64,000 bases of DNA from Lepidodermella squamata (GCA_047495785.1 JBLDXI010000017.1:434001-498000); one strand, 5' to 3'. Positions 31,672-64,000 are shown, numbered from the stretch's first letter. A program made the numbers and translations. Notes: generated by a model from the letters alone, not told the origin.

Positions 31672-34600
31672 ATGACTTACTACCCGGGCGGAAATTTTAC
31701 GTCAATATTCGGCACATTCAACGCCCCGCCTCTACTGCTCGGCCCCGGTCTGCCGCACGGCTACCCGCCGCCGTCGACAGCAGCCAGTCGGTGTTTGACG
31801 AAGCACGACGGACAAGCGGCCCAGTGCGATCAGGGCCTCATTCTACCGACCTGGCAGCCGCCGCTAATGCGGGGCGATGTTCCTACAACTACATTCCGCG
31901 CTTTTGTTTACATCGTCGCTTTGGGCTACATGCTGTTCGGCATCAACGTCATTACCGACCGCATATTGTCCGCAATCGAGGTCATTGTGTCGCAAAAACG
32001 ATCAGTCTCTGTGCGCTCAAAATCAGGTGAGAAAAATTTAATACAAACCTCCTCAAAAGTCAAAATTCGATTTTTTTCACGTATTTTGTGACACATATCA
32101 ATCGAATCAGCTTTCATCACTCATTCTTACTATCCTAGTCCTAGAACTCGTGAAAAAAATGAATTTTGCCGAGTTTTTTTCCAATTTTTGCAATAAGGAT
32201 TTAATTTTTATTCCTTTTTTTACAGGTGAGACTCATACTGTGGAGGTTCCATGTTGGCACCACGTTGTAGCCACCCTAACAGTCTACTGCATCGGTACCT
32301 CAACGCCGGAAATTTTCCTGCCAATCGTCGATGTGTTCAAACGCCGGTTCCAAGCCGATGAACTCGGCCCAGCCGTTGTAGTCGGCTCAGGCGCCTACCA
32401 CTTATTCCTAATCACCGGCGTGTGTTTAGCCTCGGTGAAAGAACCAGCTGGCAAGCCCATCCGAGATCTGAACGTGTTCTTCGTAACAGCTGCCTATGCA
32501 ATTTTCGCGTATCTCTGGATTTGGATGCTGGTCGCCGTAATTTCACCTGGGGTTGTTGAGTTGTGGGAGGCACTTATGACCCTAGCCCTCTTTCCTGCCA
32601 TCGTCTTCACTGCCTGGTTTGTTGAGCGGCGGTTGTACCGCCGGTACTACTATCGACTGAGAAACTTCCTGCGGTGTAACAAACAACCTGGGACCCCTGG
32701 AGAAGAGTCGCCTGCGGAAGATATCGGCGAGGTAGATAACGGCGCCATGTTGGATGGAATTCACGAGAGGCGCAGGAGGTTAGCACAGCTACTGCAACGG
32801 CTAAAGGTCGAATTTCCGGACAAAAGCCGGGCGGAACTCGAGGAAATGGCTGAAATGAAGCTTCTAGAAGAAATGCCGAAAGATGCTGCTTTTTATCGAA
32901 GTAAATATTTTTTGAAAATTTCAAACGAAATTCGAAACTTGGTTTTTTTCTAGTTCAAGCTGGCAAAGCGATATCTGGCGGCGGAAATTTAATTTCAAAG
33001 GAGAAAATCAAAGAAAAAATGGTTATTTTTCCATTCACTCAACTTTTGGGGAGAAATTCCGAGTTGGAAAATTGAATTTTTTTGGCTGAATGCTGATTGC
33101 TAAGAAATAATTTCCCAAGTTGTTAATGTTTATTCGATTTTTTTTCTCCGATTTTAGCGCGAGGAATTCCAGCGAAAAACGTCCTTTCATGTGATAGCAA
33201 CCGATCCGAACACCCAGTACATAACCTTCGACGCCCCTCGATACACGTGCATGGAGAGCTGCGGCCAAACCTTACTAACCGTCACAAGATCCGGCCCTGG
33301 AATCACCGAAACAGCCCTCAACGTTGAATACGAAGCCTTCGAAGGCACGGCCAAGTTCGGCGAAGATTTCGAACCGTCCAAGGGTCGACTGACCTTCCAC
33401 CCGGGCCAAATCAACGCCGATATAGCTGTCACCGTTATCGACGACGATGAATTTGAGGATGATAAAGAATTCTCCGTCCGAATCTATCGGCCACTTTTGA
33501 GGGCGTCGAAAGCTTGTTTTCAGTCGCTAATGGTACCTAGCCAGCCTGTTAATGAACCAGCTAGTCAAAAGGTCGAAATAGGCCCTATTGCCGAGGCGAC
33601 TGTTTGCATCTTGGACGACGATCATTGCGGTGTTTTTTCGTTCGAAAGCCCGGAATCAGCAATAGCTGACAATGTTGGCGTGGCGAAAATCAAGGTTGAG
33701 AGGTCAACAGGTGCGAGAGGTCGAGTTGCCGTGCCTTACAAGGTCATACCAGGCTCGGCTAAGCCTAACGATGATTACCTGGTCCTAGAGCGCAATTTTC
33801 GGCACAACGAACACGGCGCCGTGCTGCCGATGGTCGTGTTTGATAACGACGAATTTGAGGCGTATATCGAGATAGAGATTATTGATAAAAATCGAATCGG
33901 TGAGGTGGCGACGTTTTACATCGAACTAATGGAACCGGAGATTTTATCGTCGCCGCCGAAAAATCCGCTCGGCAATCCGTTGCTGGGTTCGCCGAGGTCG
34001 ATAAAACTCGGAATTTGCGAAGATGCAGAGCTGAAAGAAGCACTAGGTATATTCCCTGAACATTTTCCCGAAATCCAAAAAGAATCCCGGTAAATCTGAG
34101 GAAAATTTATGAATGCATTTTTTTTATTAAAAACTTGATTTCCCTAATATTTTATCGAATTTTTCGAGCTCTATGAATTTAGACTTCGACCACGAAATTT
34201 GAGGTTCCTAAGCTAAATATGGATCTCGAGCTTGGCCTCCATGCTAAAATTTGGTTTTTCGCGACGTTATGAAATTTTTTCAATTTTTTTTGAAAATTTG
34301 AAAATAAAAAAAAATTCAAAACGTCGCGGATTTCTGAATTTGGAGCATTAATTTAGTCAAAAAATATTTTTCGGATTTCGTACATTTCAAATTAAATTCA
34401 AATTTAAATTTAACATTTTCTGAAACTTGAAATAATTTCCGTTGATTTTAGATCGATTGCTGAAAATGGCGGATATTTCTCACCTTGTCGGCACAACCAG
34501 CTGGAGCGGCCAATTTAAAGAGGCAATCACCATCAATTTCGGCGACGAGTACCACGAGGGCGATAAAGCACAACGTCGATGGTTCAAACACATGTCGACC

Positions 34601-35389
34601 TACGCGGTATTCGGGCTCTCTCTACCCTGGCGGTTACTCGCCGCCGCCCTGCCGCCAACCTACCTCCTCCACGGTTGGCTGGCTTTCGTGTCTCTACTCG
34701 GCGTTCTTGGCTTCATGGCCGCGTTGACTGGCGATTTGGCGTCGGCGTTTGGCTGTACAGTTGGCTTGGACGACGCTGTTACAGCGGTTACGCTGATCGC
34801 CTTTGGCATGGGCCTGCCGGACACGTTTGCCAGCCGGCACGCGGCGATGAGTGAGAAAACGGCCGACGCCGCCATCGGCCACATCACAGGGTCTAATGCT
34901 GTCAGTGTCTTTCTCGGCATCGGTATTTCGTGGACTATCGCGTCCTGTTATCACCTCTACCACAATCAGCCATTCCTGGTAAGCAAAAATCAACAATCGC
35001 CCAAAATAATTCTATGAATTTTGCTAAAAATCGAAGATTCGCGAAAATTCAATTAAATTGAAGAAATTCCATCTTTTTTTTTTTTACAAAAATTTCAGCC
35101 TTCAGCTTTCAGTCCCTTTCTCTCCTCATTTCCTAAACTGATGGCGAATTTTTCCTAAAAAACTTTCCAGGTCCCTCCCGGAAGCATCGGCCTGTCGGTC
35201 ACGCTCTACTGCGCCTTCGCGACGGCCGGCATTTCGGCTCTGCTGTTAAGGCGGCTGCCACCGATCGGCGGCGAACTCGGCGGGCCCCTCGGTGTCCGCG
35301 CCATCTCGGCCGTCTTCTTCATTTGTCTGTGGTTCGCCTTTGTCGCACTGTCAATACTCGAAAATTACTGCATAATATCCGGCTTCTAG
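31672..35389 (+). CDS. NCX-like array copy A. Exons 31672-32026, 32226-32900, 32954-33021, 33158-34046, 34452-34978, 35171-35389
   Basis: GLILPTW; alpha-1 GTSTPE / GSGAYH; two Calx-beta domains (IDDDEFEDD, LDDDHCG); alpha-2 GMGLPD / GSNAVS; RR..GGELGGP; ENYC C-terminus. In-phase GT-AG introns. Confidence 0.93.
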
Positions 35390-37162: not shown

Positions 37163-40100
37163 ATGGATACCACCCCGGCTGTCGTCAACGTATTTGGCGA
37201 CTGGCGCCTGCCACCCGAAGCCCTGCCGCCAGAAGTGCATGCCATCTCCTCATCAAAACTCGGCATGGCGTCATGCAACGCCCCCAACGAATGCGAAGCC
37301 GGTCTCATCCTACCATTATGGTTGCCCCACGTAACATTCAGTGAAGACCCGTTTACCCTAATCTACCGGGCTTTCCTCTACGGATTCGCTCTAGCTTACC
37401 TCCTCTTCGGCGTCAGCATTGTAACAGACCGAATTATTACAGCGGCTGAGGTCATGGCTTCGCACAAGGTAGAGCGGACCATCAAGCTGAAATCAGGCGG
37501 AACGACCACTGTTAAGCAGCTGTTTTGGCACCCGGTTGTCGCCTCGCTAACTTTTGGCGTCGTCGGCACTTCATCCCCCGAAATCTTGTTGCCAATCATC
37601 GAAGTGTTGCACCGCGACTTTCAGGGATCCGACCTTGGTCCGTCGTTGATTGTCGGCAGCGGCGCGTATCACTTGTTCTTCATTACTTCCATATGTCTTC
37701 TGAGCGTTAGAGAATCAAAAGGGAAACCCATTAAAGATCTGCATTTATTTTTCACAACGGCTTCTTTCGCAATACTGGCGTATCTCTGGGTGTACTTGAT
37801 CATCGGAGTCTTCTCGCCAGGGGTCATCGAGTTGTGGGAGGCGCTAGTCACCCTGGCCATGTTCCCCGCCCTCATACTCATCGCCTGGATCATAGCCCGG
37901 CGGTTTCCGGTCAAACTCTGGCGGAAATGTTTGCGCCATTTGAGGCAAAAGGCACTGTCTGATGAGAAAAAACGACGAAGACGGCCCTCGCAGATGCAGC
38001 TCGGGAGTATTGGCCGAACGCCTAGTCAAGAAACTTCTGGCTCGGGAGTAGGTGTGACACGGCAGGCCAGTTTCCCGGAAGACTCAGCGGCAGATGATGA
38101 CGACGATGACGACTCGCCAGAGAACGAAAAGCGACGCAAACTTACTGCTTTGATGCAACGGCTCAAAAAACTGTTCCCGCTCAAATCTCAGCAAGAAATC
38201 GAAGGTTGAAACTCGCAATCCGCCTTAATTGTTAATTTCCGACATTTTTCGCCTGATTTTAGAAATAGCGCAGCAAGAACTCCTTGACGACACGGGCAAA
38301 AGTGCGGCCTTCTACCGGTGGGTTTTGCATGGTTACACGGCCTAACACTCTTAATAGATGCCTGAACCCCGTTTTAACATGCTCATTTTTTCCGCGGAGC
38401 TGATGTGATATGAAAGCTGATTGCTGATTTCATTCCTTCTCATCTCGAATTTTTGCTTCGTTAGCTAACGCTATGGAATTTTGAATATTTCGTAACCGTC
38501 TTACTGGTAATCCTTTAGGTTCTTCAATGCTCGGTTAAATTCGCGGTAATTTTGATACACCCTGTTCAGTAGCATAGGACAAGCTGTCTGCTATCATTAT
38601 TTCAATTTTAATACATTGAACACAGCCTTTGAAATCGTTGCTTGATACACTATGAATTTTAAATTTGCACATGCCTCGAAGTTTACTTTGCTATTCGAAT
38701 CTCACCCCGTAGATTGCAGGCGACTAAAGCCTTCTCCGGTACCAGAAACATGATGGATCTAATGCGAGAGAAAATGGTGAGTTAACTCAATTAGATTTCT
38801 GTTAACCTACCGGTGTATTTTACGCAGGAGGATCAAGGCCGGTCCTCTGCTATGGGTGCTGCGCCATCAAACGCAAACGCGCAACTTGTCGGATTTTCTT
38901 CAAGCCTGTCAACTTGCCAAGAAAGTTGCGGCACATGTGTGATCAAAGTTAACCGATCTGGCGCTGGGGTCAACGAGACAACGACTTTAGTAGAGTATGA
39001 AACTATTGAAGGAACGGCCAAGGCAAACGTGAACTTTGCTCCAACCTCTGGGCAACTTATCTTTTTGCCCGGTCAGCTTAGCAGCGAAATCAAAGTGAGA
39101 ATTCTTGATGACGGAATTTACGACGAGGTCTGCAAGTACTTTGAGATAAAGCTCTCGAATCCTGTCCTGCGAGAGCAATCGACTACTCTCTCTCGGTTGA
39201 TAGTGTCCCCGTCAAGACGCGGCTCTCCGCCTACTTTGCAGTTTAAGGTTAGCCGGGTCGAGCTGAGTATTCCTCAAACGAAAGTTTCCATTCTTGACGA
39301 CGATCACTGCGGAGTTTTCTCATTCGAGCGACCAGAGCAAACAATACCGGACAATATAGGAATAGGGACAATCAAAGTCATTCGGTCGATTGGAAGTAAA
39401 GGGCGCATTAATGTACCTTACAAGATAACACCTGGAACCGCCAAGCCAAATGCGGACTACATTGCTTCAAAATCAAAAGGAACTCTCTGCTTTGAAGATG
39501 GGCAAGCCGAGGCCAATATCGAAGTCACAATTATCGATAAAAATCGCCATGGAGAGGTCTATACGTTTTATATCGAGCTGCAGCAACCTCTTAAAGATGC
39601 CGACATTAAGGCGACTATAGGAGATCCGGTTCTTGGTGACCCAAAGGCTGTACAGATCGGAATTTGCGAAGACGAAGAAATGGAGCAGATGCTGGATCGC
39701 TTGCTCAAAATGACTGATATGGCTGAATATTTCATGTCAGCATCGTGGAAGTCTCAACTCAGGGACGCCGTAATTGTGTTCCGCGACGAGGAAGCTAAAA
39801 AGATTCCGATTTGCCAACGCGTGAAATACTACACTATACATGCTGTAGCATTTCCTTGGAAGCTATTAGTCGCACTCGTCCCCCCGGCTAGAATAATGCA
39901 CGGCTGGCTGTCGTACTGCACTTGCTTGTGTTACATGGGCTTCATAGCTGCGCTTATCGGCGACTGCGCCAGTCATCTCGGTTGTACGATTGGTCTCAAA
40001 GACACAGTTACAGCCATTACGCTCATTCCTTTTGGGATGGGTCTGCCTGATACTTTCGCGAGCAGGAGAGCTGCGATTCACGAAGCAACCGCCGATGCAG

Positions 40101-40479
40101 CGATTGGTTCCATAACAGGTTCTAATGCAGTGTCTGTCTTTCTTGGAATGGGAATGGCTTGGACAATCGGTGCTGGAGTTCGAACAATAAGAGCTGATTA
40201 CTTTCGCGTAAGATTCAAAATGTGAACAGTACTGCTTAACATTTACGATTTATTTAGATGCCTCCTTCTGATTTCGACTTCAGTGTAATGCTCTACTGCA
40301 CGTTGGCCAGCATCTGTGTTCTATTTTTGCTGCTACGTCGGTTGCCCCCGATTCGCGGCGAGCTAGGCGGCCCGTTCAGTCTTCAAATTTTATCAGCTCT
40401 TTTCATTCTATGCTTTTGGATTATTTTCATCGTACTGTCAGCTCTAAAGAGCTACTGCTACATAAATGGCTTCACATAA
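37163..40479 (+). CDS. NCX-like array copy B. Exons 37163-38204, 38263-38317, 38713-38776, 38828-40207, 40258-40479
   Basis: GTSSPE / GSGAYH, two Calx-beta domains, GMGLPD / GSNAVS, GELGGP. Confidence 0.93.
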
Positions 40480-42450: not shown

Positions 42451-45400
42451 ATGACTGAAAATGGTGGTGATATGATCACTGGCAACGAAACGAAGGCTGA
42501 AATTCTCAATGCAGCTTTTGCCGAGTCTACTACATCACTAACCACTGCTTTATTTACTTCAGTCGTCGATTTCAATAACAACAGCTCGTTACTCAACAAC
42601 ACCAAATATCTGTCCAAGTGTGTTGTCGAGCGGCGAAACTGCAGTAGCGCCATTATATTGCCATTATGGCTTCCTCAGGTCAGCGAAAGCTCAGAACCAG
42701 GGGCTGTCATCGCCTATCGAACAATCACGTACTCGATAATCCTAGCGTACCTCCTTTTCGGCGTCAGCATCGTGACTGATAGAATTCTTACGGCTGCGGA
42801 AGTCATTTTATCCCACAAGAGAAATGTCACTGTCAGGCTGAAATCCGGTGAAACGAAAACGAATAAAGTACAGGTTTGGCACCCCATAGTTGGCTACTGC
42901 ATATTCTGCACACCTGCTACTTCATCCCAATCACTGCTTTTACCTATTATAGGAGTATTTAGGCGCAACTTTCAAGGTAATGTTGTGAATAATGTCGGTT
43001 ACAAACCTAAATATTCGGTATTTCAGGTGACGAATTAGGTCCTTCTGTGATTGTCGGTACTGGAGCCTTTCAATACTACGTTGTTTTGGCTGTTTGTCTT
43101 CTCAGTATAAAAGACACTTTCCCGAAGCCTATTAGGAATCTTCACATCTTCTTCACGTCATCATTCTACACAATATTCGCTTATTTATGGATATTTCTCA
43201 TCCTGGACGAATTTTCGCCAGGAAAAATAGACTTATGGGAAGCAATATTCACGGTATGCTGATTTCCTGATTTTTCATTGATTTTTCATTGCCTTTTTTT
43301 TAGCTAATGATCTTTCCTCTTTTCGTCGTGTCAGTATGGCTGACTGCGAAACGCATTCCACAACGATTCTTTCATAGGATTGTGCGATCTTGTCGAGCTT
43401 CAACTGTTACCCCGTCTGACGGGGATGATTCTTCCGAAATGAGCGTCACGGTGGATGCCGATTCGCCGGAACAAGAGCAGCGGCGAAGATTTGTAAAATT
43501 GATGCACAAATATAAGCAAGAATACCCGGAGAAAACAAATCATGGTTTGAGTTCTGAAAAATCCTATTATTTCATAGTCATTGTACCTCTTTTAACAGAA
43601 TTGGAGCAAATGGTCATCCAAGAAATGGACGAAGAGCAAGAGAGGAGCGAATTGTTCTATCGACTTCAGGGTGGCACAAAAGGCTTATCTATATCCCATG
43701 GGATAATGCCAATGTCTGAGGAAGGCAAGGTATGTCATCCCATCCTGTTTTTGTCAACCCATCACACATGTTTTCCTACTAAATAGGACAACTTAAAAAA
43801 GACTCTAGAAGGCTTAAGTCAAAACGTTCAATCTGTCGGATTTGTCGCCCATGAAATAAGCTGCGCCGAGAGCAGCGGCGCAGCCACCCTTGTCGTCGAG
43901 CGGCGAGGCCCTGGATGTGAGGAGCACGTGCTTATGGTTAATTTCGACACAGTCGAATGCACGGCCAAGGCGAATTCCAATTTTCTTCCCGTCAATGGAG
44001 CTAAGCTGACTTTTTACCCCGGTGAAACCCAAGCTGAAATAGAAGTCTCAATATTGGATGATCATATCTTCGACCCTACCGCGAAATTCTTCAAAGTGAA
44101 GCTGTCTAATCCTATGGTAATCGGCGTTTCGGATTACGACTTCAGAGTTGAGTTAGGACTGCAAGAGTGTACTGTTTCAATAATGGATGACGACCACTGC
44201 GGAATCTTTGCCTTCGAAAGACAAGAGTTAGTCACATACATAATATTTTGCAATATTAATGATCATGTTTTTCCACTTTAGCTTGGCTGTTGCGGATGAT
44301 TGCGAGGTTGCTAAAGTTCCGGTTCATCGTACTGTCGGCTCTAGAGGAACTATTTGTGTTCCTTATCACATCGTACCCGGCAGTGCGAAACCGGGTGATG
44401 ACTATATTGCTCCTCAGAAAAATGAGGTCGTCTTCCAAAGCGGGCAACTTGAAGCTACCATCGACATACGAATCATCGACAAAGTTCGCAACGGCAAGGT
44501 TTTCACGTTTTACATCGAACTCCTTACGCCGAAGAAAGTCTCAGAGGACATCGAAAAGACCATTGGAGACCCAGCTCTTGGGGACCAAAAGCTAATCCAG
44601 GTTGGAATTTGCGAGAACGAGGAGATTCAAGAAGCTTTGAAGCGTATCGCGAAAGTTAATGATTTAGCTTCGCATATCGCAGCCTCGACTTGGAAAGACC
44701 AATTATTCGGCACTTTCACGGTCTATCCAGGAAACAGCGCCAAGGACGTGCCTTATATGACACTACTTTACGCCTATACCCTGCACGTGTTGGCATTTCC
44801 GTGGAAACTTGCGATAGCCATCATTCCACCGCCAGGGTTCGCTCAAGGCTATGTTGCGTATTTCTCGCTTCTTGGAGTTATGCTGATCATAACTGTCCTC
44901 GTGAGTGACTGCGCGTCCTATCTAGGGTGCACAATGGGAATCAAAGACACTATAACTGCTATCACTCTGATCTCTTTCGGAACTGGTATTCCGGGTCTGT
45001 TTTCTAGTCGAAGGGCCGCGATGCGGGAAAAGACAGCAGACGCTGCTATCGGAGCGATAACTCGAGCAAATGCCTCCACTAAGTTTCTAGGCATCGGGAT
45101 CGCTTGGACAATCGGCGCTGCTTACCAAATGGCTGTTGGAGATGAACGAGGATTTACGGTGAGATTTTTAATAACTATTAATGTCCCAGCAACATTTAAA
45201 AAATTGAAATTGCAGATCAAATCAAACGACGTAGGATTTAGCGTTTTGCTCTATTGCTCTTTCACAACGGTAGTTATTATTGTGTTAATGCTTCGACGAC
45301 TGCCGCCAATTCGTGGCGAGTTGGGCGGTCCGAACTGGGCTAAATATCTATCAGCCGGTCTGTTCATCGTACTATGGCTAACGTTCATCACTCTTTCCAT

Positions 45401-45458
45401 TCTGGAGAACTACTGTTACATCCGGATATTGGAATTGAGACATTTTCAATCTGCGTAG
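42451..45458 (+). CDS. NCX-like array copy C, lacking both core acidic residues. Exons 42451-42976, 43027-43253, 43304-43544, 43599-43729, 43787-44226, 44282-45158, 45216-45458
   Basis: Full NCX architecture in an open spliced frame; alpha-1 reads PATSSQS / GTGAFQ and alpha-2 reads GTGIPG / RANAST. Confidence 0.9.
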
Positions 45459-52660: not shown

Positions 52661-55598
52661 ATGGGAATAAAACTAGAAAATATTACAAATTCTACCGCCG
52701 TACATGCATGCTATGAAGCAACTCAATGTGTTGATGGTATCATTCTACCAGTATGGATTAGGGACGAAAGTGAAGTTGGCGCATTACGATCGGTCGGAAC
52801 CTTCTACAGAGCGGTGATCTACATCGCTGGCCTCGCCTATGTTCTATTCGGTGTCAGCATAGTCACAGATCACATCGTTGAGATAACCCATTACATGGCT
52901 GAGCATAAGCGCAGTGTTAGCATGAAGCTGAAATCAGGGACTATAACAACTGTCAAAGTTCTTGTTTGGCATCCGGCTGTAGCAGCCTTAAGTTTTCACG
53001 TTATCGGAACAAGCTCACCTGAAATTTTGCTCCCGGTCATTGAAATGATCAAATTCCACTTTCATGGTAACGAACTCGGCCCATTTCTCATTATTGGAAG
53101 CGGAGCCTATCATCTCTTCATAATCACAGGTGCGTAACAAAATTTTTACGAGTATTCATGTAATTTGCTATCACTTTTAGCCGTTTGCATGTTCACTGTT
53201 CGAGAACCTGAGGTCAAAGCAATTAAAGACCTCCATTTGTTCTTCACAACTGCTGCTTTCGCGATTTTCGCTTACTTATGGGTGTACCTTCTACTGGACG
53301 TCATATCTCCCAATATCATTGAGTTATGGGAAGCGATTATCACACTGTCCCTCTTTCCGGCTCTGGTAACCGCGGGATATTTAGTTGCTCGGCGTAAACC
53401 TGCTGGCATTGTAACTCGTATAACAAATTTAGCTCTCAAGAGTAATGCTGTGCATCCTTCTCCACATTTACGCCCTCGTTCTGCTAACAACTTACTATCA
53501 GGCACATTGGACAACTTGAATAGTCTGGCGTCTCCCAGCAGCACGAACAGCATTATTTGCCCAATAAACTTTGAAATCGGCGACGAGGAAAGCAGCCGTG
53601 AAATATCCCGAGACTTCCTTCAACTGAAAAGAAATGGCTCTACTGCAAAGCGTTATGCAGTTGGCTTTAAAAACAAATTGGAGAGGCAACCAGAGGTGGA
53701 GATGGAGCGTGAGTTCAATTTTCAATAATTTCTCCAATTATTGTATCCATTACTTTCAGAGGCGGAGAACATCGAATTGGAACAAGAAGTTAAGATAACT
53801 TTCACAAATTACAGAACTCCTAGAGTTAGCCAAGATACCAAGTCGCCAAGCACTGACCAAAGAGGCTCAACGCTGCTCGATATTTTGGAGGCAAATAGCC
53901 GCATTGGCCCAGAAAGTTTAACCCAAGTTATTGGCTTCAAATCTGCGACGCAATCCTGCGAAGAGGGCTGTGGTTCTGTTTCTCTTATAGTCGAGCGATG
54001 GGGCGCTGGGATTGATGAAACAACGCTTTTTGTAGACTTCGAAACAATCCCCGCGACGGCGAAGGGAAACGTGAATTATAGGACAACAAGCGGTTGTTTG
54101 ATTTTTGCTCCTAAGGAGACTCAGGCAGACATTTTGGTCGATATACTTGATGACGATGTCTACGAAAAGGCTGCGAAAGTGTTCAAAGTCAAGCTATCAA
54201 AGCCAACAATATCAGCTCAACATCTAGTAACAGAAGCTGCCGCTATAGGACTCGAAATCCCAACTGCAAGGCGTGAATCTCTTCGACGGACAAAGTCTCA
54301 CACAAATGAATCTGTTTCATCATGGACACCCGCTCCGAAAGCGAAAAGGGTCAGACGAATTATGTTTGATCGAGATGAAATAGCCGTATCGATTGTGGAC
54401 AGTGATCATGGTGGCGTTTTCGCCTTCGAAAAAGCTGAACTTCCCGTACCAGACAACGTAGGAATAGCTCGAATTCGGGTAATAAGAGGAACTGGATCAA
54501 AAGGCCGGGTTATAGTACCGTACCGGATAACTTCAGGTACTGCCAGGCCTCATGAGGATTACATAGCCCAGGCGAACGGTTCCCTGACTTTCGACGACGG
54601 CCAGATAGAATCTTGTATCGAAATTCAAATTATCGACAAAAATCGTTATGGCGAGGTCTACAATTTTTACATACAGCTACAAACGCCTCGATTCGAGGCC
54701 GTAATAGACAAGGCCAGTAGGATCCACGCCCCCTCAATAGGTCATCCGCATCTCGTTCAGGTCGGAATATGCGAGAGCGAGGAGACGCAGGAGGCGCTGC
54801 ATCGATTGATGACTACGCCGGACTTGACACCGCAATTTGTCGGGCAAGAGTGGCGGGATCAGTTTCGCGAGGCTTTGAAAGTTCAGCTGATTGATGACCA
54901 CGACGATTTAGGATGCTTCCGAAGTCACATTCGTCCATACCTATTCTACGTTCTAGCATTGCCATGGAAACTAGCTGTTGCCGCGAAACCACCGAAGCGG
55001 CTACTTCACGGTTGGCTCTCATACTTATTCCTGATAGGAATCATGGCTTTAGCTGCAATTTTCATTGGGGACTGCGCGTCACACCTGGCGTGCACCTTGG
55101 GATTGAAAGATACTATAATGGCCATAACTCTCATTCCATTCGGAATGGGTCTGCCTGATACTTTTGCCAGTCGGAGAGCTGCTATTTTCGAAAAAACAGC
55201 CGACGTGGCTATTGGAGGGATTTTGGGCTCAAACGCAGTGAGTGTCTTCTTAGGAATTGGTCTTTCGTGGACGATCGGAGCTTCGTATCAAACTGCTAAT
55301 GGGAGTTTTTTGAAGGTATGGTTTACCTTATTATCGGTCAGATTTGTTTTATATTTGTTTCTTTCAGATGAACTCGGGGAAGCTTGGATTCAGCGTCATG
55401 CTCTACTGCACATTCGCATCGGCTGGATGTCTCGTCCTGGTGCTCAGGCGGTTGCCTCCAATACGCGGCGAGCTGGGCGGCACTCGAGTGGTGAAACACT
55501 TGTCAACAGCATTTTTCGCCCTTTTGTGGATCTTGTTCATCATTTTAAATATTCTTGAGAATTACTGTGTCATCGGAGGATTTAGGCAATCAAATTAA
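52661..55598 (+). CDS. NCX-like array copy F. Exons 52661-53129, 53181-53708, 53760-55315, 55368-55598
   Basis: GTSSPE / GSGAYH, two Calx-beta domains, GMGLPD / GSNAVS, GELGG. Confidence 0.93.
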
Positions 55599-56250
55599 TG
55601 AAGTGTACTCAGCTTTGCCCGAAGGTGGATTGTCGGCAATTCAGACCCAACGCAGTATTAAAGTTGATTAATTCTCGTGGAAAGTCGCGTGGTTTCAATA
55701 AATTGATCGAGATTCATGCTGTCCTATGAAATTATACGCTGAAACTGAGCCCTACCCTCAAGTATCTTAACGTCTGGAGTAGGCAGAACTCAAGTGAACC
55801 ATAACGTTTTTACAAAGTAAATTACCAATCTCATTGTAAACCATGCACAGGGTAGCAGCTATGCCTTTGTTTCTGTGTCCGGTGTAAAAATGCACCCTGA
55901 GTACAGATTTGCAAATGACCGAGAAAAATACTCGCTCGTAGACATGAACAGGTTCAAATGACGAGGGATCCTTCAACAAAATCAGCCACTTATTAAACGT
56001 TTTTATTATACAGCGAGCCAGTCGAGTTGATTGATTGGAACGTGCTACAGAGCTGTTCTGAAGAATTTCGATGGCCCCTATTTTTTAACGAATGCGAAAT
56101 TTGATACTTTCAGCTTTTGAGCAACTGAGAAGGAAGAAATAAATTAATCAATATTTCACTCACCATAAACTCGGTTGATGCTACTTGACACTACTCACTA
56201 CTACATTATAACTATCGTGGATCTAATAGATACTCAGTAGATACAGGATA

Positions 56251-59092
56251 ATGCAACTAACATATAACTCGAGCGTGAGTGGTCTGAATTCATCTTATTG
56301 CTTTGAAAGCCACACATGTGTCGCCGGCATCGCTCTACCAATTTGGAAACAGATCGCAAACGAAACCGACGCTCTCCGATGGCTAGGCGTAATTTACAAG
56401 GCTATAGTCTACATCGTCGGCCTGGCATACGTATTATTCGGCGTCACCATTGTCACAGATCACATCGTTGAGATTTCACATTACATGGCTGAGCACAAAC
56501 GAAGTGTCAGCTTGAAACTTAAATCCGGGACTACTACAACAGTAAAGGTCTTAGTTTGGCATCCAACTGTAGCAGCTCTGAGTTTCCATGTTGTCGGAAC
56601 CTGCTCAGCCGAAATTTTGCTTCCAGTCATTGAAATGATAAAAAACGATTTCCACAGCAGTGAGCTTGGTCCTTTCCTCATCATTGGAAGTGGTGCTTAC
56701 CATTTATTCATAATCACAGGTAAGTTTTCGTGTATTGCTCAGAAATCCTTCTCAGCAATGTTTTTACAGCTGTGTGCATGTACACTGTCCGTGAATCACC
56801 CGGCAAATCAATCAGAGATTTGCATTTGTTCTTCACGACAGCAGGTTTCGCAATATTCGCGTATCTTTGGGTATTCTTAGCCCTTGATGTCTTTTCACCA
56901 AATATTATTGAACTATGGGAGGCAATTTTCACTCTGTCACTCTTTCCTGTCTTAATTATAACTGCTTATCTGGTAGCACGAAGAAGGCCCGTGGGAATTG
57001 TTACTCGTCTGAATAATCTAGCGCTGAGAAGCAACGTAATTATGCCGGGAATTAGAACGCCATCTCGGGCAACATTATTCACCCCTGAAGTTCCGGAGAG
57101 TTCAAGGAAAAGCGACCCACAAGTTCAAGTAACGCAACAGAGTTTAAGCCCTTACCTAACTGTGGCTCAAAGCGGAACTTTGTCGCCGCAAGCTATCGAG
57201 CGGAGCAACTCGATCAACAGCCGTATTGATACTCTTGCTAAGGAACGACCAGACAGACCGAGATCTGAAATTGAAAGTAATAACCTAATACTTCACATTG
57301 CGATTTAATATTTTTTTAAATCAGGAATGGTCCACTCGGAATCTAAGTTATTTCGGCACTATCGTTTGCGATATAACATCGAAGAGAAACAGCCGGAAAG
57401 TCCTGATCATAGAGACTTGTCACTTCTTGCCATTCTCGAGGCTAACAGCCGTGTTGGGCCAGAGACTTTAACACAGGTAATTGGCTTCAAAACGGCCGAT
57501 CATCGCTGCGAAGAAGGTTGCGGTGCAGTGTCTTTAATCGTAGAACGTTGGGGAGCGGGTGTCGATAACACAACGCTGTTCGTAGACTTCGAGACGGTGC
57601 CTGGAACCGCAAAAGGAAACGTCAATTTCAAAACCACAAGCGGGTGTTTAATCTTTGGACCTGGCGAGCTACAGTCTGAAGTTTTGGTCAACATCTTGGA
57701 CGACGATGTTTACGACAAGGATGTGAAATGGTTCAAAGTCAAGCTGTCGAAACCAACGATAAACACGCAATTTTTGAACCCAAACCGAGTTCAGGTCATG
57801 GGACCAAAGCGGGGCAGGAAAGCTCGAAGAATGGACTCAAGGATTCTAAATGTCCGACGGATAATGTTCGATCGCGATGAAATCACTGTTTCGATTATTG
57901 ACAGCGACCATGCTGGCATCTTCGCCTTCGAAAAAGCTGAAATTCCAGTTCCGGATGATATAGAAGTCGCCGAATTTCGTGTACTGCGAACGATCGGCTC
58001 AAAAGGTCGCGTTGTAGCACCCTACCGAATAACTTCTGGCACGGCACTCTTGCATGAAGACTATATAGCTGAACCGACTGGTTCGCTAACCTTTGACGAC
58101 AAACAAACCGAGGCTTTCATAAAAATTCGAATAATCGACAAAAATCGCTACGGAGAGGTGCATAACTTCTACATCGAACTGCTGACGCCTAATTGCGAAT
58201 TGGATGCCAAAACCACGATCCATGCACCGTCAATAGGCCAGCCTCATATTCTTCAGGTCGGTATTTGTGAAAGTGAGGAAGCTCAAGAGGCTCTGAGGCG
58301 TTTGATGAAAACGCCAGATCTGACCCCTCGTATTGTAGCGAAAGAATGGCGCAAGCAATTCGTTGAAGCGATGAATATTCACCGAAGTGAAGACCGAGAG
58401 GATCTCGGATATTTCGCAGCTAATATCCGACCTTATATTATTCATTTCTTGGCTCTACCTTGGAAATTAGCCATCGCGATTATGCCGCCGAAATGTTTAC
58501 TCCATGGTTGGCTGTCGTACATATTTCTAATCGGAATCATGGTTATCGCAGCAATTTTCATTGGCGATTGCGCTACTAGTCTAGCGTGTACAATCGGCAT
58601 CAAGGAGCCGATAGTTGGAATCACGTTGATTCCTTTCGGACTAGGACTTGCGGATACGTTTGCTAGTCGAAGAGCTGCTATTTTCGAAAAAACTGCTGAT
58701 GTGGCGATTGGAAACATTCTAGGGGCAAATGCAGTCAGTGTCTTTCTAGGAATCGGTCTTTCTTGGACGATAGGCGCTGGCTATCAAAGCGCTCATGGCA
58801 GCGTATTGAAGGTTGGTTTAGATTTCCATATGATCCGGAAATTTATGTGCATTTCATCTTTTCTCAGATGAGCTCGGGAAACCTTGGTTTCAGCGTCATG
58901 CTTTACTGCACATTTGCCTCAGCCGGCGTGTTGGTGCTTCTTCTAAGGAGGCTTCCTCCAGTTCGAGGAGAGCTCGGTGGTCCGAAAATTATCAAAAATG
59001 CATCCACGACCTTTTTCGTCCTCCTATGGATCATTTTCATCATTTTAAATGTTCTTGAGAATTACTGCTTGATTAGCGGCTTTAAGCACTGA
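56251..59092 (+). CDS. NCX-like array copy G (closest to F). Exons 56251-56719, 56770-57276, 57325-58811, 58868-59092
   Basis: GTCSAE / GSGAYH, two Calx-beta domains, GLGLAD / GANAVS, GELGGP; same intron set as F. Confidence 0.93.
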
Positions 59093-59289
59093 TCGATACA
59101 TTTTTAATTAATAAAACAATTGCTTACACGAACAATTTGCCTACTTTCATTTTAGCTTAATCACTAGATTTGCCCGGGGTCAGATGTCAGGTGCATTAGA
59201 AAGCCTATACATCCTGTTTGCTATAGGCTGTTTTCCATATTAAAGCCTTCACTTCCGTCGGCTTGTCATTACATTAACGTCGCTTCGCT

Positions 59290-62148
59290 ATGAATGCCGT
59301 CAATCTTTCTCAGCTTAACATAACCATTAATTATTCAGATAACTCTACAACCGATAGCGACCAATGCTACACGTCCGTGATTCTGGATATTTGGGGCCAA
59401 GATGAAGCTATATTTCAGGCAAACTTCGTCGCTTTTCGGGTCATTGTCTATTTGGCCATATTGTCCTACCTCATGTACGGCTGCAGCCTTATAACGGATC
59501 AAATAGTTGTAGCAGCGGAGATGATTGCTACACAAAGACGGGCTGTTTATGTAACCTTAAAATCCGGGAATAGAGTGGCGACTAATGTAACAACTCCTGC
59601 TTAATTAATTTTTTATTTATTTTCTGCGATTTTTGAGTAGCGCGTTTTGTGGCATCACACAATTGCAGCTTTAACTATTTACGCTATTGGCATCAGTTCC
59701 GTAGAAATTTGCATTCCAATCATCAAAGTCGTTTCACTCAACTTCCAAGGAGATACGCTCGGGCCATCGTTAATTGCCGGCAGTTCTGCATTTCATTTCC
59801 TCCTGAGCACAGGTTAATTAATTACACGCTAATGAATATCGATAGATATTAACCTTTTTATTTAGGAATATGCCTTTGGGTTACACCCGGGTCAGCAGTT
59901 AAAGAGATCAGAGATAGCTACCACGTCCTCATCACAGCGATATTCTTTGCGACTACATACTTGGTACGCACTTTCCTTTTTTGAGATTTTTGCATCAGTT
60001 TCAATTCTTTGAAGTGGTTGTTTCTGATCTCGGATGTGATCTCTCCCGGGGTTGCTGAACTGTGGGAAGCGCTTCTTTTGCTCGCAATATATCCCGCTAT
60101 GGTCATATCTGCTTGGCTGGTGGCCCGCCGGATACCCGTGGGACTGGTTGCTAGGTTAAAATTTCTCATGATGCGGCGCAACGTCAACTTCTTACCAGCT
60201 CCAACCGCCATTTGGTTTACATCGTCACGCTTCTCAACGCAAATGAGTGTCACTAGCGACAGTGGAGAGCGAAAAAATTCGGTTATTCGAATATTGCAAC
60301 TTCAAAAAGAGCATCCTAAGAGGACAAGGGATGAGTTGGAAGGTAATCGCCCCTTTTCAAGTAAATCAAACAATTTGATGCTTTTTTGTTTTTTGCTCAG
60401 AAATCGCAAGATTGGAGGTCAATGATGAAGAGGAGCAGAGGGCGGCCATTTTCTACCGGGATCGAACTCGATCAAGGCATAAGAATGTCAGCTTAAAAGC
60501 ACGCAACTTGGACACCATTCTTGAAGGATTGAGCCGTGAAGGGCCGGAGTCTACGACGCAATGGGTCGGATTTAGGAAGAGCAAACTTTTGGTTGAAGAG
60601 GGATGTGGGGCTGTTCCGATTCCTGTCGAGCGATGGGGCGCTGGAATAGACGAGACAATTCTGATAATAGATTTCGAAACAATCCAGCTCTCTGCAAAAA
60701 GTAACATCAACTTCAAACAGTCAAATGGGTCGATCATTTTCGGTCCGGGTGAACCGCGGTGTGACGTGGTTGTGAACATTTTGAGTGACGACGTCTACAG
60801 CAAGGATGATAAGACATTCCGAGTCAAACTTTCAAGGCCGAAACTCGAGCTTAAATCTGCAACGAAAAGATGGGCATCTGCAAGAAGTTTGAGGCCGACT
60901 CTTTCGCAGATCGAGCCGGTAGTCCAGGTGAATAGGACAACATTCCACCGGGATGAAATTACTATCGCAATAATCGACAGCGATCAATGCGGGACGTTTC
61001 ATTTCGAGAAACGTGACCTGCCCTTGCCGGATGATATCGGCGCAGCTAGTATCAAAGTATACCGGTCGAGGGGCTCAAAATGCGCCGTTCTAGTTCCATA
61101 TCGAATAACACCCGGCAGTGCCAAGCTGAATGACGACTTTTTCGCAGAATCATCTGTATTGGAATTCTCCGAGGGTCAAACTGAGGCTTCAATCACAGTT
61201 TTTATCTTCGATAAAAATCGTTACGGACAGGTTCATAACTTCTACATCGAATTGCTACAACCTCGAACGGAAGCCATCAAGCCAAACATTCGACCACCCA
61301 AGCTTGGTTATCCGTATCAGGTTCAAGTCGGCATTTGCGAGAGTGAGGAGACCTTTGAGGCATTATGTCAGATGAAAAATTCGCAGAGCCTCTCCTGGCA
61401 AGAAATGGCAAACTGTTGGCGGCGGCATGTTTTCGACCAACTAATTGGTGTATTCTTCAAAAATCACGACGAGGACTCCATTCTAACTTGTGCGAAACCT
61501 TATTTTATCCACATGTTCTCTTTCCCGTGGAAATTGCTACTCGCAATCTCGCCTCCGAGTAGAATTTTTCACGGGTGGCCTTCTTTTATCACACTGTTAG
61601 CAGTTATGGTTCTGATATCGATTCTAATCTGCGATTGCTCGTCTCATTTATCTTGCCTAACCGGTGTGAGGGAGTCTGTGATAGGACTAACCATCATCCC
61701 TTTAGGCTTGGGTATGCCTGATACAGCTTTAAGGAGGAAAGCGGCGATCTACGAGAAATTTGCAGATGCAGCTATTGGAAATCTGATCGGAACAAATTTG
61801 GTCAAATCATTGTTAGGCCTTGCAATTTCATGGTTGGCTGGAGCAGCATACCACATCTCCTCCGGAGGGGATTATGAGGTAAGACAATGGTAATAAGAGC
61901 CTAATTGGAAGATTCAAGTATATTTTCAGTTAGCGTTCGCAAAGGATGTTGGTTTCAGCTTCTTACTCTGCTGCATAATGACGACAGCTGGCTTTGCTGT
62001 ATTGCAACTACGTCGGCTATCTCCCATCCAGGGAGAATTAGGAGGACATATTGTCTTGAAGTATATCAGTGCAATTTTCTTTCTATCTCTCTGGATCGCT
62101 TTTGTTACCTTGACTGTCTTGAAAAATTACAGCCTTATACAATTTTAG
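59290..62148 (+). CDS. NCX-like array copy H (highly diverged). Exons 59290-59586, 59641-59812, 59866-59963, 60015-60342, 60401-61878, 61930-62148
   Basis: GISSVE / GSSAFH, two Calx-beta domains, GLGMPD / GTNLVK, GELGG; open after splicing. Confidence 0.9.
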
Positions 62149-62315
62149 TCGAAATGAAATAAAGGATTAAATGACGTGAACACTCAGAAGTTTTGGGCTG
62201 CAGGCTAATAAACATAAATCGATGTGGTTTAATGGTTTGCCCAAAGGGTAGGGATTACAAAGCTGCTACTCACAAAATATATGTCATTGCCTCGGAGTTC
62301 TCGATTTTAGCAAAA

Positions 62316-64000
62316 ATGATAGATGCCGATTTGACTTGCAATGTCTCGGATCATTATGACAATGGATCGTGCCATTCAGAGCGGCATTGTGAGGGAGGTC
62401 TCATTCTACCCGTTTGGGGATTCTCAGAAGCTGAGGAGGAAATGAATCCCTACATCCCAATTATATATCATGCCTTAATTTACATAATATCACTGGGATA
62501 TCTTCTCCTTGGCGTAAGCATCATTACTGACCGACTAGTATCGGCAACTGAGTACATGAGTGACCAGAAAAGAAGCATCGAGGTCACGCTCAGTACGGGG
62601 AATTCTACCCTTATTAAGGTAACTCCTAAACAATTTTCGCAACCCGTTTTTTCACTCAGTTTCAGTTACCGATTTGGCACCCAAACGTGGCAGCACTGAG
62701 TTTGCATGTTATTGGCACAAGTGCTCCAGAGATTTTACTGCCAGTTATTGAAATTTTCAAACTCCGCTTTGAAACAACACACGAGCTCGGGTCTTCACTT
62801 ATTTTGGGAAGTGGAGCTTATCACCTCTTCATCATCACATGTAAGCAAGCGATTTGAAATTGCTACATTTAACCTAATTTTTGGACATTTTAGCTGTGTG
62901 TCTAGCTACAGTGCGCGGAGAAGCTCCAAAGCCAATACGAGATCTAAGATTATTCTTCCTCACAGCTGCATTCGCAATTTCAGCCTATCTATGGGTGTTT
63001 CTTGTCCTTGACATCATTTCGCCTCAACAAATCGAACTGTGGGAGGCTTTGGTCACGCTAGCGCTCTTCCCTACCCTCCTCGTGCTAGCCTGGTTGCAAG
63101 GCAGAAGGACTCCAGTCAGCCTTCTTTCGAGGCTAAACCACGCTGTCCACAAAAGTAGGTCATCAGCTGCAAACCACTTTCGACAGGCAGAATCTGACGC
63201 TGCGTTGAAGCGGTGGAGCATTGTAAGCAGCCGTGTTGAATTTTTAAAGCAAGAATATCCTGGCAAGACGTCGGAGGAGCTACAGGAGATTGCTAGCATG
63301 GAACTTGAAGGTATCGGAGATAACCGGCGACCCTCTGCTTACCGGTTTACGCGACCGAAAACCCCTGCGACGAAAAACCGAACCTTAGCAGACATTCTCG
63401 AGACTCACAACAGGGTTGACCCGGATAAGATTACTCAAAGCGTCGGGTTCCCGATAGCAACAGTAAACTGTGATGAAAACTGCGAGAAAGTCAAGATTCC
63501 GGTCGAAAGATGGGGTACTGGCCTAGACGAAACTTCCCTCTTTGTCGAATTCGAAACCGTGCAAGGTACCGCTAAAGACGGGGTAAACTTCAAAGGCAAG
63601 TCTGGGTGCATTTCGTTTCCTCCTGGAGAAAGTCGGGCATACATAACCATCGAAATCTTGGACGACGATGTTTACAGCAAAGACCCTCGACGTTTCAAAG
63701 TTAAGCTTGCTAAACCAATAGTCAGCTACCCGCGAGTTGAACTTCCAGCTTCCTCTACTCAAACGGCACAAGTTCAGCGGATTATCTTTGAACGGAATGA
63801 ATTGAGCGTATTAATACTGGACAGCGACCATTTCGGCGTCTTTTCGTTTGAAACTTATGACATACCTATACCGGACAACATCGGAGTCGCGAAAATCAAG
63901 GTCAGGAGGACTATGGGTGCGAAGGGATCTGTAGCTGTTTCCTACAGGATCACACCAGGTACCGCAAGACTTGGCGAGGACTACGTCGCTCAACCAGCTG
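62316..64000 (+). CDS. NCX-like array copy I, truncated by window end. Exons 62316-62618, 62666-62840, 62894->64000
   Basis: CEGGLILPVW, GTSAPE / GSGAYH, CBD1 (ILDDDVYS, LDSDHFG) and start of CBD2. Confidence 0.9.

What the first reader, a model, noticed from the sequence alone, without database searches (positions are those of the whole stretch)
32294..62840. Ion-binding core is systematically rewired, with His and Met replacing oxygen ligands
Seen: the canonical neighbour has GSSAPE / GSAAYN. In the array the TM3 Asn (NCX1 N143, NCX_Mj N81) is His in A, B, D, F, G, H and I, Gln in C and Arg in E. Alpha-2 GTSVPD becomes GMGLPD (A, B, F), GTGLPD (D), GLALPD (E), GLGLAD (G), GLGMPD (H), GTGIPG (C), so the Ser (S811/S210) is lost in all eight complete copies. 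The TM8 Asn (N842/D240) is S, T, G or K in all eight. The core Glu and Asp are mostly kept. Known: these positions form the Sext, Smid and Ca sites and determine selectivity across the CaCA superfamily. Inference: Na+ coupling is probably changed. A conserved His, often with Met, beside retained carboxylates suggests H+ coupling, pH sensing or transition-metal (Zn, Mn, Ni, Cu) transport.
Basis: partly seen in the sequence, partly recalled or inferred. Interest (0 to 1): 0.88.

Follow-up and report, generated by a model that had tools for sequence, protein, structure and literature searches.

The report
Rewired sodium-calcium exchanger gene family
Nine tandem genes in an unidentified small invertebrate derive from the sodium-calcium exchanger but have a conserved, rebuilt ion pocket, kept by natural selection, so they probably move calcium or another metal with a different partner ion than the textbook exchanger.

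Summary
Nine intact NCX (SLC8)-like genes, A to I, lie on the + strand at 31672-64000. A canonical NCX lies on the - strand at 16-2968.

At the 12 ion-coordinating positions defined in NCX_Mj, 45 non-redundant canonical NCXs are essentially invariant (A S S E S N A T S D S N). The array consensus is V T S E S H P M/L G D S S. The Ca site and the Sint site are kept. The two Sext hydroxyls are lost. The Smid pair becomes His and Ser.

At least 10 more copies carry the same signature in a metagenome animal, with pairwise orthologues. All 19 copies form a 100/100 clade on a long stem, beside the two animals' own canonical NCX.

Of 29 coding differences from a DNA run, 27 are synonymous, so the genes are under purifying selection. 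Ion-site columns are enriched for class switches (7/12 against 28/133, p = 0.009).

Changed Na+ coupling is a sound inference. H+ or transition-metal coupling remains untested, and the Met position is labile, which argues against it being an obligate ligand. The scan had already noted this array and copy C on this same window.

Verdict: a new variant of a known kind. Function is unknown but testable.

The parts
31672..35389 (+). Copy A, 901 aa, 5 exons. GTSTPE at 32294-32311, GSGAYH at 32384-32401, GMGLPD at 34805-34822, GSNAVS at 34889-34906.
   Evidence: Spliced model; motif coordinates. Its orthologue is meta_y2 (100/100).
37163..40479 (+). Copy B, 911 aa, 4 exons. GTSSPE at 37565-37582, GSGAYH at 37655-37672, GMGLPD at 40034-40051, GSNAVS at 40118-40135.
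   Evidence: HMMER alignment to human NCX1. Its orthologue is meta_m1.
42451..45458 (+). Copy C, 887 aa, 7 exons. It lacks both pocket carboxylates: ATSSQS at 42916-42933, GTGAFQ at 43056-43073, GTGIPG at 44979-44996, RANAST at 45063-45080.
   Evidence: Its orthologue meta_m2 (100/98) shows the same losses (ATSSQT / GSGAFQ / GLCLPG / RSNVST).
46392..49241 (+). Copy D, 897 aa, 4 exons. GTSWPE at 46865-46882, GSGAYH at 46955-46972, GTGLPD at 48797-48814, ASNAVG at 48881-48898.
   Evidence: Its orthologue is meta_z1 (P0207), 100/100.
49516..52328 (+). Copy E, 869 aa, 5 exons. GTSSPE at 49925-49942, GSGAYR (Arg in place of His) at 50015-50032, GLALPD at 51882-51899, GSNAAS at 51966-51983.
   Evidence: All 10 coding differences from DNA run X2 are synonymous. 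Contigs of RNA run X1 cover the 3' half.
52661..55598 (+). Copy F, 908 aa, 4 exons. GTSSPE at 53006-53023, GSGAYH at 53096-53113, GMGLPD at 55142-55159, GSNAVS at 55226-55243.
   Evidence: Eight synonymous and one conservative (V>I) coding difference from X2. X1 RNA contigs cover 53500-55699 but not the flanking intergenic DNA.
56251..59092 (+). Copy G, 895 aa, 4 exons. GTCSAE at 56596-56613, GSGAYH at 56686-56703, GLGLAD at 58638-58655, GANAVS at 58722-58739.
   Evidence: Nine synonymous and one conservative (T>S) difference from X2. It is 65% identical to F.
59290..62148 (+). Copy H, 863 aa, 6 exons, the most diverged window copy. GISSVE at 59689-59706, GSSAFH at 59779-59796, GLGMPD at 61705-61722, GTNLVK (Lys at the TM8 site) at 61789-61806.
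   Evidence: terminal branch length 1.15.
62232..64000 (+). Copy I, cut off by the window end (557 aa seen). GTSAPE at 62714-62731, GSGAYH at 62807-62824. The alpha-2 repeat is not in the window.
16..2968 (-). The 5' part of the canonical NCX gene (GSSAPE / GSAAYN). The rest lies beyond the window start.
   Evidence: It groups with the metagenome animal's canonical NCX (meta_y3, 100/98), and the pair is sister to the variant clade (90/96).

Best explanation
Shown:
- The array is a real, expressed and selectively maintained subfamily of SLC8/NCX exchangers.
- It arose by duplication of this animal lineage's own canonical NCX.
- It passed through a burst of change (stem of about 1 substitution per site) that rebuilt the ion pocket, and then radiated into tandem arrays. 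At least 9 copies are here and at least 10 are in a related metagenome animal.

Inferred:
- The proteins are still alternating-access cation exchangers. They keep the central divalent site: the Glu and Asp carboxylates plus the TM2 and TM7 backbone.
- They keep the cytoplasm-side monovalent site Sint (Thr, Ser, Asp, Ser).
- They have lost the extracellular Na+ site Sext. Its two hydroxyls are replaced by Met/Leu and Gly, a roughly volume-conserving swap that probably plugs the site.
- The central water site Smid is refilled by His (Arg in copy E), paired with a smaller Ser (Lys in copy H) on TM8.

Prediction:
- They cannot bind 3 Na+ as NCX does, so they should exchange Ca2+ or another divalent cation with fewer Na+ ions or with a different counter-ion.
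- The His would act as a titratable or cationic group, giving H+ coupling or pH gating.
- Copies C, meta_m2 and meta_x1 lack the carboxylate pair and carry Gln instead of His. They are probably non-transporting or have quite different substrates.
For: - Domain content is Na_Ca_ex x2 plus Calx-beta x2. The match to human NCX1 is E = 1e-77.
- An AlphaFold2 model of family member P0001 has pLDDT 86.6, with the broken TM2 and TM7 helices at the motifs. Its best PDB matches are the NCX1 cryo-EM structures, E = 4e-52.
- The 12-site table covers 19 variant copies against an invariant canonical signature.
- Site assignments come from PMC5133943.
- All nine frames are intact.
- 27 synonymous against 2 conservative non-synonymous differences from DNA run X2 in copies E, F and G.
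- Contigs of RNA run X1 lie only on the 3' parts of E and F and not on the spacers.
- The variant clade has 100/100 support, sits beside the two animals' canonical NCX, and contains orthologue pairs A/y2, B/m1, C/m2 and D/z1.
- His changes only 3 times on the tree. Gln appears only in copies that have lost the Glu/Asp pair. Arg and Lys are tolerated at the Smid pair.
- Precedent: NCLX keeps SCa, lacks Na+ ligands and uses Na+, K+, Li+ and possibly H+ (PMC13483046).
Against: - No flux or binding data exist.
- N81A is silent in NCX_Mj, so the His may be structurally tolerated rather than mechanistically important.
- Copies m1 and m5 keep the TM8 Asn together with His, so the His/Ser size compensation is not strict.
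- I had no model coordinates, so I could not measure side-chain geometry or the distance from His to the carboxylates.
- The fold evidence comes from a 48%-identical relative (P0001), not from a window copy.
- RNA evidence covers only E and F and did not resolve splice junctions.
Confidence: 0.5

Rival explanations
1. They are transition-metal (Zn2+, Mn2+, Fe2+, Cu+) exchangers. His, Met and the two carboxylates would form a borderline or soft metal site, by analogy with the Asp/Asn/Met site of NRAMP (from general knowledge). CaCA members linked to Mg/Zn or Mn (plant MHX, Borrelia bb0164) would be precedents.
For: - His is present in 15 of 19 copies and Met in 10 of 18, next to the retained Glu and Asp.
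- Plant MHX shows that an NCX-type protein can change its substrate ions (PMC3679957).
- A 2026 preprint links a CaCA homologue to Mn2+ homeostasis (listed; I did not read it).
Against: - The Met position is among the most labile of the 12 sites: M/L/T/W, at least 7 changes.
- Copies G and H combine His with Leu, and E has Arg with Leu.
- The hard-oxygen Sint ligands (Thr, Ser, Ser) are conserved, which suits Na+ or Ca2+ rather than soft metals.
Confidence: 0.15
2. They are still conventional Na+/Ca2+ exchangers. The substitutions only tune kinetics or affinity, and water or backbone carbonyls replace the lost hydroxyls.
For: - SCa, Sint, S77 and both carboxylates are kept.
- N81A is neutral in NCX_Mj.
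- NCKX differs from NCX_Mj at only 2 of the 12 sites yet has a different stoichiometry, which shows that sequence-to-function rules are loose (PMC9820601).
Against: - The 12-site signature is essentially invariant in 45 non-redundant NCXs from protists to vertebrates. That implies strong constraint on ordinary NCX function.
- This clade changed 7 of the 12 sites on one long branch and then conserved the new state.
- A canonical NCX is retained alongside the variants in both animals.
Confidence: 0.13
3. They are non-transporting derivatives, such as sensors, regulators or partners of the canonical NCX, kept for their Calx-beta and loop functions.
For: - Copies C, m2 and x1 have lost the carboxylates that are essential for transport, yet C/m2 is conserved as an orthologue pair.
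- The CBD2 acidic cluster is replaced by DKNRxGE in all variant copies, so regulation is also rewired.
Against: - Most copies keep Glu, Asp, Thr, Ser and Ser at the pocket, with few changes on the tree.
- The differences from run X2 that fall in membrane segments are synonymous.
- A sensor would have no reason to preserve a complete Ca/Sint pocket.
Confidence: 0.1
4. They are decaying duplicates or pseudogenes, and the pattern is drift.
For: The copies evolve fast: orthologue branches are 0.34-0.99, against 0.15-0.18 for the canonical gene.
Against: - All nine frames are open.
- The ratio of synonymous to non-synonymous differences is 27:2.
- The same substitutions are kept in two species.
- RNA coverage is present.
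Confidence: 0.02

Closest known systems
Canonical NCX / SLC8A1-3 (human NCX1, Drosophila CALX, C. elegans NCX-1 to -3)
   Same: - Same architecture: N-terminal extracellular Cys motif, TM1-5 with alpha-1, long loop with an XIP-like region and two Calx-beta domains, TM6-10 with alpha-2.
- 29-36% identity.
- Nested beside the lineage's own NCX in the tree.
   Different: - 7 of the 12 ion-site positions have a different consensus: N143 to H, T810 to M/L, S811 to G, N842 to S, S109 to T, and the two backbone positions A to V and A to P.
- WNET becomes WHP in TM2.
- The CBD2 acidic cluster is replaced by basic residues.
- The genes sit in tandem arrays of 9 or more.
NCLX / SLC8B1
   Same: It keeps the central Ca site but lacks several Na+ ligands. 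It is the published example of relaxed counter-ion selectivity arising that way (PMC13483046).
   Different: - It belongs to a different branch of the superfamily (CCX) and has no Calx-beta domains.
- NCLX replaces the ligands with small residues (Gly, Ala, Val) that enlarge the pocket. Here His and Met/Leu fill it.
Plant MHX (Mg2+/H+ and Zn2+/H+ exchanger)
   Same: It is an NCX-derived, lineage-restricted family whose change of substrate is ascribed to alpha-1 substitutions, E113 to Q among them (PMC3679957).
   Different: - It is plant-specific and lacks Calx-beta domains.
- Its diagnostic changes (Asp100, Gln112, Asp119) are not those seen here, and most array copies keep the Glu.
NCX_Mj engineered with NCLX residues (9 of 12 sites swapped)
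   Same: It shows that swapping the 12 ligands is enough to change counter-ion selectivity while transport is kept (PMC5133943).
   Different: It is an artificial construct with a different residue set.

Membership tests
SLC8 / NCX family (CaCA superfamily) | Two Na_Ca_ex (PF01699) alpha-repeat membrane domains | tested here: met
   Pfam hits on the exons of B and F; alpha-1 and alpha-2 align without gaps to NCX1.
SLC8 / NCX family (CaCA superfamily) | Large cytosolic loop with two Calx-beta domains (CBD1, CBD2) | tested here: met
   PF03160 matched in 2 stretches, E = 1e-35. Matches to the CBD12 structures 3us9 and 3rb5.
SLC8 / NCX family (CaCA superfamily) | NCX1-like 10-TM fold | tested here: met
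   AlphaFold2 model of family member P0001 (pLDDT 86.6) best matches 8sgj, 9iv8, 8sgt and 8jp0, E = 4e-52. This was tested on a 48%-identical relative, not on a window copy.
SLC8 / NCX family (CaCA superfamily) | Placement within or beside the bilaterian NCX clade in a phylogeny | tested here: met
   The variant clade (100/100) is sister to win_canonical + meta_y3 (90/96) inside the animal NCXs.
SLC8 / NCX family (CaCA superfamily) | Canonical 12-residue ion-coordination signature (A S S E S N / A T S D S N) | tested here: not met
   The consensus is changed at 7 of 12 positions, and the canonical residue is kept in 20% or fewer of the copies at 6 of them.
SLC8 / NCX family (CaCA superfamily) | Electrogenic 3Na+:1Ca2+ exchange | not testable with these tools
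   This needs flux or patch-clamp assays.
NCKX / SLC24 | Asp at the TM8 site for K+ dependence (NCKX2 D575, recalled from memory), and no Calx-beta domains | tested here: not met
   The TM8 site is S/T/G/K/N and never Asp. Calx-beta domains are present.
NCLX / CCX | No Calx-beta domains; small residues at S51, S236, S77 and N81 | tested here: not met
   S51, S77 and S236 are kept, N81 is His, and Calx-beta domains are present. NCLX chains match only at E of about 5e-4.
Plant MHX | Gln in place of the alpha-1 Glu (NCX1 E113); Asp at the N101 and E120 positions | tested here: not met
   Glu is kept in 16 of 19 copies. The MHX criteria are from PMC3679957.

The most novel reading that the evidence does not exclude
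This is a previously undescribed, lineage-restricted SLC8-derived transporter family. Its pocket (Glu, Asp, His, Met/Leu, with no Sext) would confer a coupling mode unknown for NCX-type proteins: H+-coupled or electroneutral divalent-cation exchange, or transition-metal transport. The paralogues would have diversified in selectivity at the two labile positions (T209 and D240 equivalents). A conserved carboxylate-less paralogue (C/m2) would serve a non-transport role.
Probability: 0.35. Interest if true: 0.8.

Novelty: new variant of a known kind. Interest (0 to 1): 0.62.

Why it matters
The 12 ion ligands of NCX are among the most conserved features of the CaCA superfamily. How they set stoichiometry and selectivity is still argued from a few families (NCX, NCKX, NCLX, CAX) and from engineered mutants.

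This clade is a natural, selected experiment on that question. It has an NCX scaffold with intact regulatory domains. One Na+ site has been removed, and a His, Arg or Lys sits at the central water site. It offers about 19 paralogues that vary at two further pocket positions.

Expressing a few copies, and making the reciprocal swaps in NCX1 or NCX_Mj, would test directly whether Sext sets the 3:1 stoichiometry. It would also test whether a titratable residue at Smid can bring in H+ coupling.

The family is absent from annotated genomes. I found it only here and in one metagenome animal.

Tried and rejected
- **Pseudogene or drift reading:** rejected, because all frames are intact and differences from run X2 are 27 synonymous to 2 non-synonymous.
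- **Spliced-alignment artefacts:** my aligner first proposed in-frame 'introns' with weak donors inside the variable loops. I treated these as insertions relative to the query unless their position was conserved among copies. A's first two junctions were corrected by eye. None of this touches the alpha-repeats.
- **RNA evidence for splicing:** run X1 is held only as short contigs with many 'opposite strands' joints. No splice junction could be read, and a SMART-primer loose end at 52359 is ambiguous in orientation.
- **Wider distribution:**
  - The profile search of 1.84 billion representatives was swamped by giant multi-Calx-beta proteins. Only P0001, P0002, P0168, P0207, P0209, P0213 and P0279 were of the variant type, all from the same metagenome samples.
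  - A JGI metagenome scan with the motifs GM[GS]LPD[TM]F and E[KNA][TSY]AD[AV][AS]IG[SGH] found no relative.
  - The ESM Atlas returned only canonical NCX clusters.
- **Organism:** the best menin hits are only 40% identical, spread over hemichordates, molluscs and arthropods. The animal remains unidentified.
- **Literature:** searches for N143/N842 variants and for invertebrate NCX expansions found nothing on this clade.
- **Geometry of His and Met in the model:** not measurable, because the structure tool returns no coordinates.
- **dN/dS between paralogues or orthologues:** not attempted, because protein distances of 0.7-1.6 imply saturated synonymous sites.


Full report
**What is in the window**

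A tblastn overview and a spliced protein-to-genome alignment with the intronless relative P0001 define nine co-oriented genes on the + strand:
- A 31672-35389
- B 37163-40479
- C 42451-45458
- D 46392-49241
- E 49516-52328
- F 52661-55598
- G 56251-59092
- H 59290-62148
- I 62232 to the window end

Each has three to seven exons. Most introns are about 50 nt; copies A and B have longer ones, up to 473 nt. All reading frames are open, and the eight complete products are 863-911 aa.

Pfam finds Na_Ca_ex twice and Calx-beta twice. The best solved relatives are the human NCX1 cryo-EM chains, E = 1e-77.

The 5' part of a canonical NCX gene lies on the - strand at 16-2968 and reads GSSAPE / GSAAYN. 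Between it and the array lie ordinary animal genes: a mitochondrial EF-G-like gene, menin, an F-box/ApaG-like gene, an NKAP-like gene and an RPC34-like gene. Only menin was checked by search; the other names rest on reading the ORF translations.

**Checking the observation**

The HMMER alignments to NCX1 are gapless through both alpha-repeats. The TM3 His therefore occupies exactly the position of NCX1 N143 (NCX_Mj N81). It lies four residues after the retained Ser (S77), on the same helical face.

I mapped the 12 published ligand positions of NCX_Mj (PMC5133943):
- Sint: A47, T50, S51, E213, S236
- Sext: A206, T209, S210, E54, S77
- Smid: E54, N81, E213, D240
- SCa: T50, E54, T209, E213

In 45 non-redundant canonical NCXs, from protists to vertebrates, the signature is essentially invariant: A S S E S N / A T S D S N. 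The array consensus is V T S E S H / P M(L) G D S S.

Among the 145 columns that are at least 90% conserved in canonical NCXs, the consensus differs in 7 of the 12 ion-site columns and in 28 of the 133 others (Fisher p = 0.009). Restricted to membrane regions the counts are 7/12 against 24/94 (p = 0.026). The pocket has therefore changed more than the rest of the conserved core.

All Sint side-chain ligands and both carboxylates are kept. Both Sext hydroxyls are gone: T209 is M in A, B and F, L in E, G and H, and T in C and D; S210 is G, or A in E. The backbone position A206 is mostly Pro.

The Smid pair changes from Asn/Asn to His/Ser. The two swaps, Thr+Ser to Met+Gly and Asn+Asn to His+Ser, roughly conserve side-chain volume. 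That estimate rests on standard residue volumes and is an inference. It suggests the Sext and Smid cavities are filled by protein rather than left open.

**A real gene family under selection**

- *Relatives.* The closest database proteins, P0001 and P0002 (41% and 37% identity), carry the same signature. They and P0168, P0207, P0209, P0213 and P0279 come from contigs of one metagenome animal (ENA ERZ27333047, ERZ27332993 and the CAOS20-1 samples). There they again form tandem arrays: at least seven copies on one 35-kb contig, and further copies next to that animal's canonical NCX and next to an EF-G gene.
- *Residues across the family.* Across 19 variant copies, the TM3 residue is His in 15, Gln in 3 (C, m2, x1) and Arg in 1 (E). 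Across the 18 copies with an alpha-2 repeat, the S210 position is Gly in 15, and Asp is kept in 15. Glu is kept in 16 of 19.
- *Phylogeny.* A maximum-likelihood tree puts all variants in one clade (100/100) on a stem of about 1.0 substitution per site. The clade is sister to the two animals' own canonical NCXs (90/96). It contains orthologue pairs A/y2, B/m1, C/m2 and D/z1. The family therefore predates the split of the two animals and has kept its new pocket since.
- *Selection.* A DNA run that holds 84% of the sampled words (X2) differs from the window at 29 listed coding positions in E, F and G. Of these, 27 are synonymous and 2 are conservative (V>I, T>S). The listed intron and spacer positions vary freely.
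- *Expression.* A 2015 cDNA-type run (X1) has contigs only over the 3' parts of E and F and none over the spacers. That fits 3'-biased transcripts rather than DNA contamination. Splice junctions could not be read.

**Fold**

An AlphaFold2 model of P0001, built on 67 aligned sequences, has mean pLDDT 86.6 and pTM 0.73. It shows the characteristic helix breaks at ATSSPE (residues 132-137) and GMGLPD (720-725). His167 lies inside the TM3 helix in blocks with pLDDT above 90. Foldseek ranks the four human NCX1 structures first, E = 4e-52 to 5e-46, over the whole length. I had no coordinates, so I could not measure side-chain geometry.

**How constrained is each new residue?**

Minimum numbers of changes within the variant clade:

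| Position | Changes |
|---|---|
| His (N81) | 3 |
| Gly (S210) | 3 |
| Glu (E54) | 3 |
| Asp (E213) | 2 |
| Ser (S77) | 2 |
| Met (T209) | 7 |
| TM8 (D240) | 7 |

The His is a hallmark of the family. The Met is not: Met, Leu and Thr alternate repeatedly. Gln replaces His only in copies that have also lost the Glu/Asp pair. Arg (copy E) and Lys (copy H, at the TM8 site) are tolerated at Smid. This points to a functional link between the His and the carboxylates, and to tolerance of a fixed positive charge at that spot.

**Interpretation**

In NCX_Mj, three Na+ ions occupy Sint, SCa and Sext, and Smid holds a water molecule. N81A does not change exchange rates, and occupancy of Sext bends TM7 and occludes the pocket (PMC5133943). 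The most consequential change here is therefore the loss of Sext, not the His by itself.

NCLX is the published case of a CaCA protein that keeps SCa, lacks Na+ ligands and accepts Na+, K+, Li+ and possibly H+ (PMC13483046). Plant MHX shows an NCX-type protein turned into a Mg/Zn:H+ exchanger (PMC3679957).

My best reading (about 0.5) is that these are exchangers of Ca2+ or another divalent cation with altered counter-ion or stoichiometry, in which the His acts as a titratable or cationic element.

The rivals are:
- transition-metal transport, 0.15; weakened by the labile Met and the conserved hard-oxygen Sint
- ordinary Na+/Ca2+ exchange, 0.13; hard to square with the invariance of the signature elsewhere and with a canonical copy being retained in both animals
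- non-transport roles, 0.10; likely for C, m2 and x1
- decay, 0.02

**Comparison and novelty**

By architecture, fold and phylogeny these are SLC8/NCX derivatives. They fail one defining feature of the family, the ligand signature, and their transport mode is untested. They are not NCKX, NCLX/CCX, CAX or MHX (see the membership rows).

No paper in the searched library describes them. No annotated genome protein of this type was returned by any of the protein searches. A motif scan of JGI metagenomes found none. I file them as a new variant of a known kind.

The scan had already noted the array and copy C on this same window (s1-379568, s1-379857). Those notes are not independent evidence.

Noticed in passing
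window: TM2 start of every copy, e.g. B around 37520-37535 ('FWHPVVA'). C. elegans NCX N127 = NCX1 'WN96ET'.: There is a second family-wide Asn-to-His switch. The canonical WNET is WHP (WHH in copy A) in 18 of 19 variant copies, with only one change on the tree. It is the most conserved class switch found. NCX1 N101 (in VSNLT) is also lost. Other switch columns cluster in the alpha-repeats: GPST to GPSL, GSA to GSG, LLS to LLP.
   Followed up: partly
window: Calx-beta regions of all copies, e.g. B 38795-39600: The regulatory Ca2+ sites are rewired as well. The CBD2 acidic cluster (D/N-x-E-E-Y-E-K) is DKNRxGE in all variant copies. CBD1 D421 is Asn in most copies, but the A group (A, y2, m4, m5) keeps the full canonical CBD1 set (DFE/DYE, IDDDEFE, DDDH). 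F to I have DSD instead of DDD.
   Followed up: partly
window 42451-45458 (copy C) and L001:6876-9517 (meta_m2): The paralogue without carboxylates is conserved as an orthologue pair across the two animals (100/98), with the same losses (ATSSQS/T, Gln in TM3, G-x-x-x-P-G in TM7). This is a long-lived non-canonical copy, not a recent casualty.
   Followed up: partly
L007:1000-4100 (meta_x1): This is an extremely diverged member (terminal branch 2.48) with SWASLD / GHSCFQ / FWGLHH / SLNIVT and a long insert in CBD1. Its frame is open, so it is either degenerating or put to a new use.
   Followed up: no
L010:4616-10409 against window 11598-15752 and 46392-49241: In the metagenome animal the orthologue of copy D (z1 = P0207) lies directly downstream of an EF-G gene. 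In the window an EF-G-like gene lies between the canonical NCX and the array. In L005 the metagenome animal's canonical NCX (y3) sits beside variants y1 and y2. The neighbourhood of canonical NCX, EF-G and variants therefore seems old.
   Followed up: no
window 51569-51773: In DNA run X2, eight differences occur at about half depth (51-53 of 110-112) and all are synonymous, which suggests two haplotypes in that sample. Elsewhere the differences are at full depth.
   Followed up: no
window 52359: A contig of RNA run X1 ends here, 31 nt after E's stop codon, joined to a SMART cDNA primer followed by a run of T. This may be the poly(A) site of copy E, but the orientation is ambiguous and an AATAAA lies further downstream at 52384-52389.
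   Followed up: partly
window 18290-20011 (- strand): A single-exon menin gene whose best database matches are only about 40% identical, spread over hemichordates, molluscs, echinoderms and arthropods. The genome belongs to a bilaterian lineage without an annotated close relative in the protein collection. It is intron-poor, with introns of about 50 nt.
   Followed up: partly
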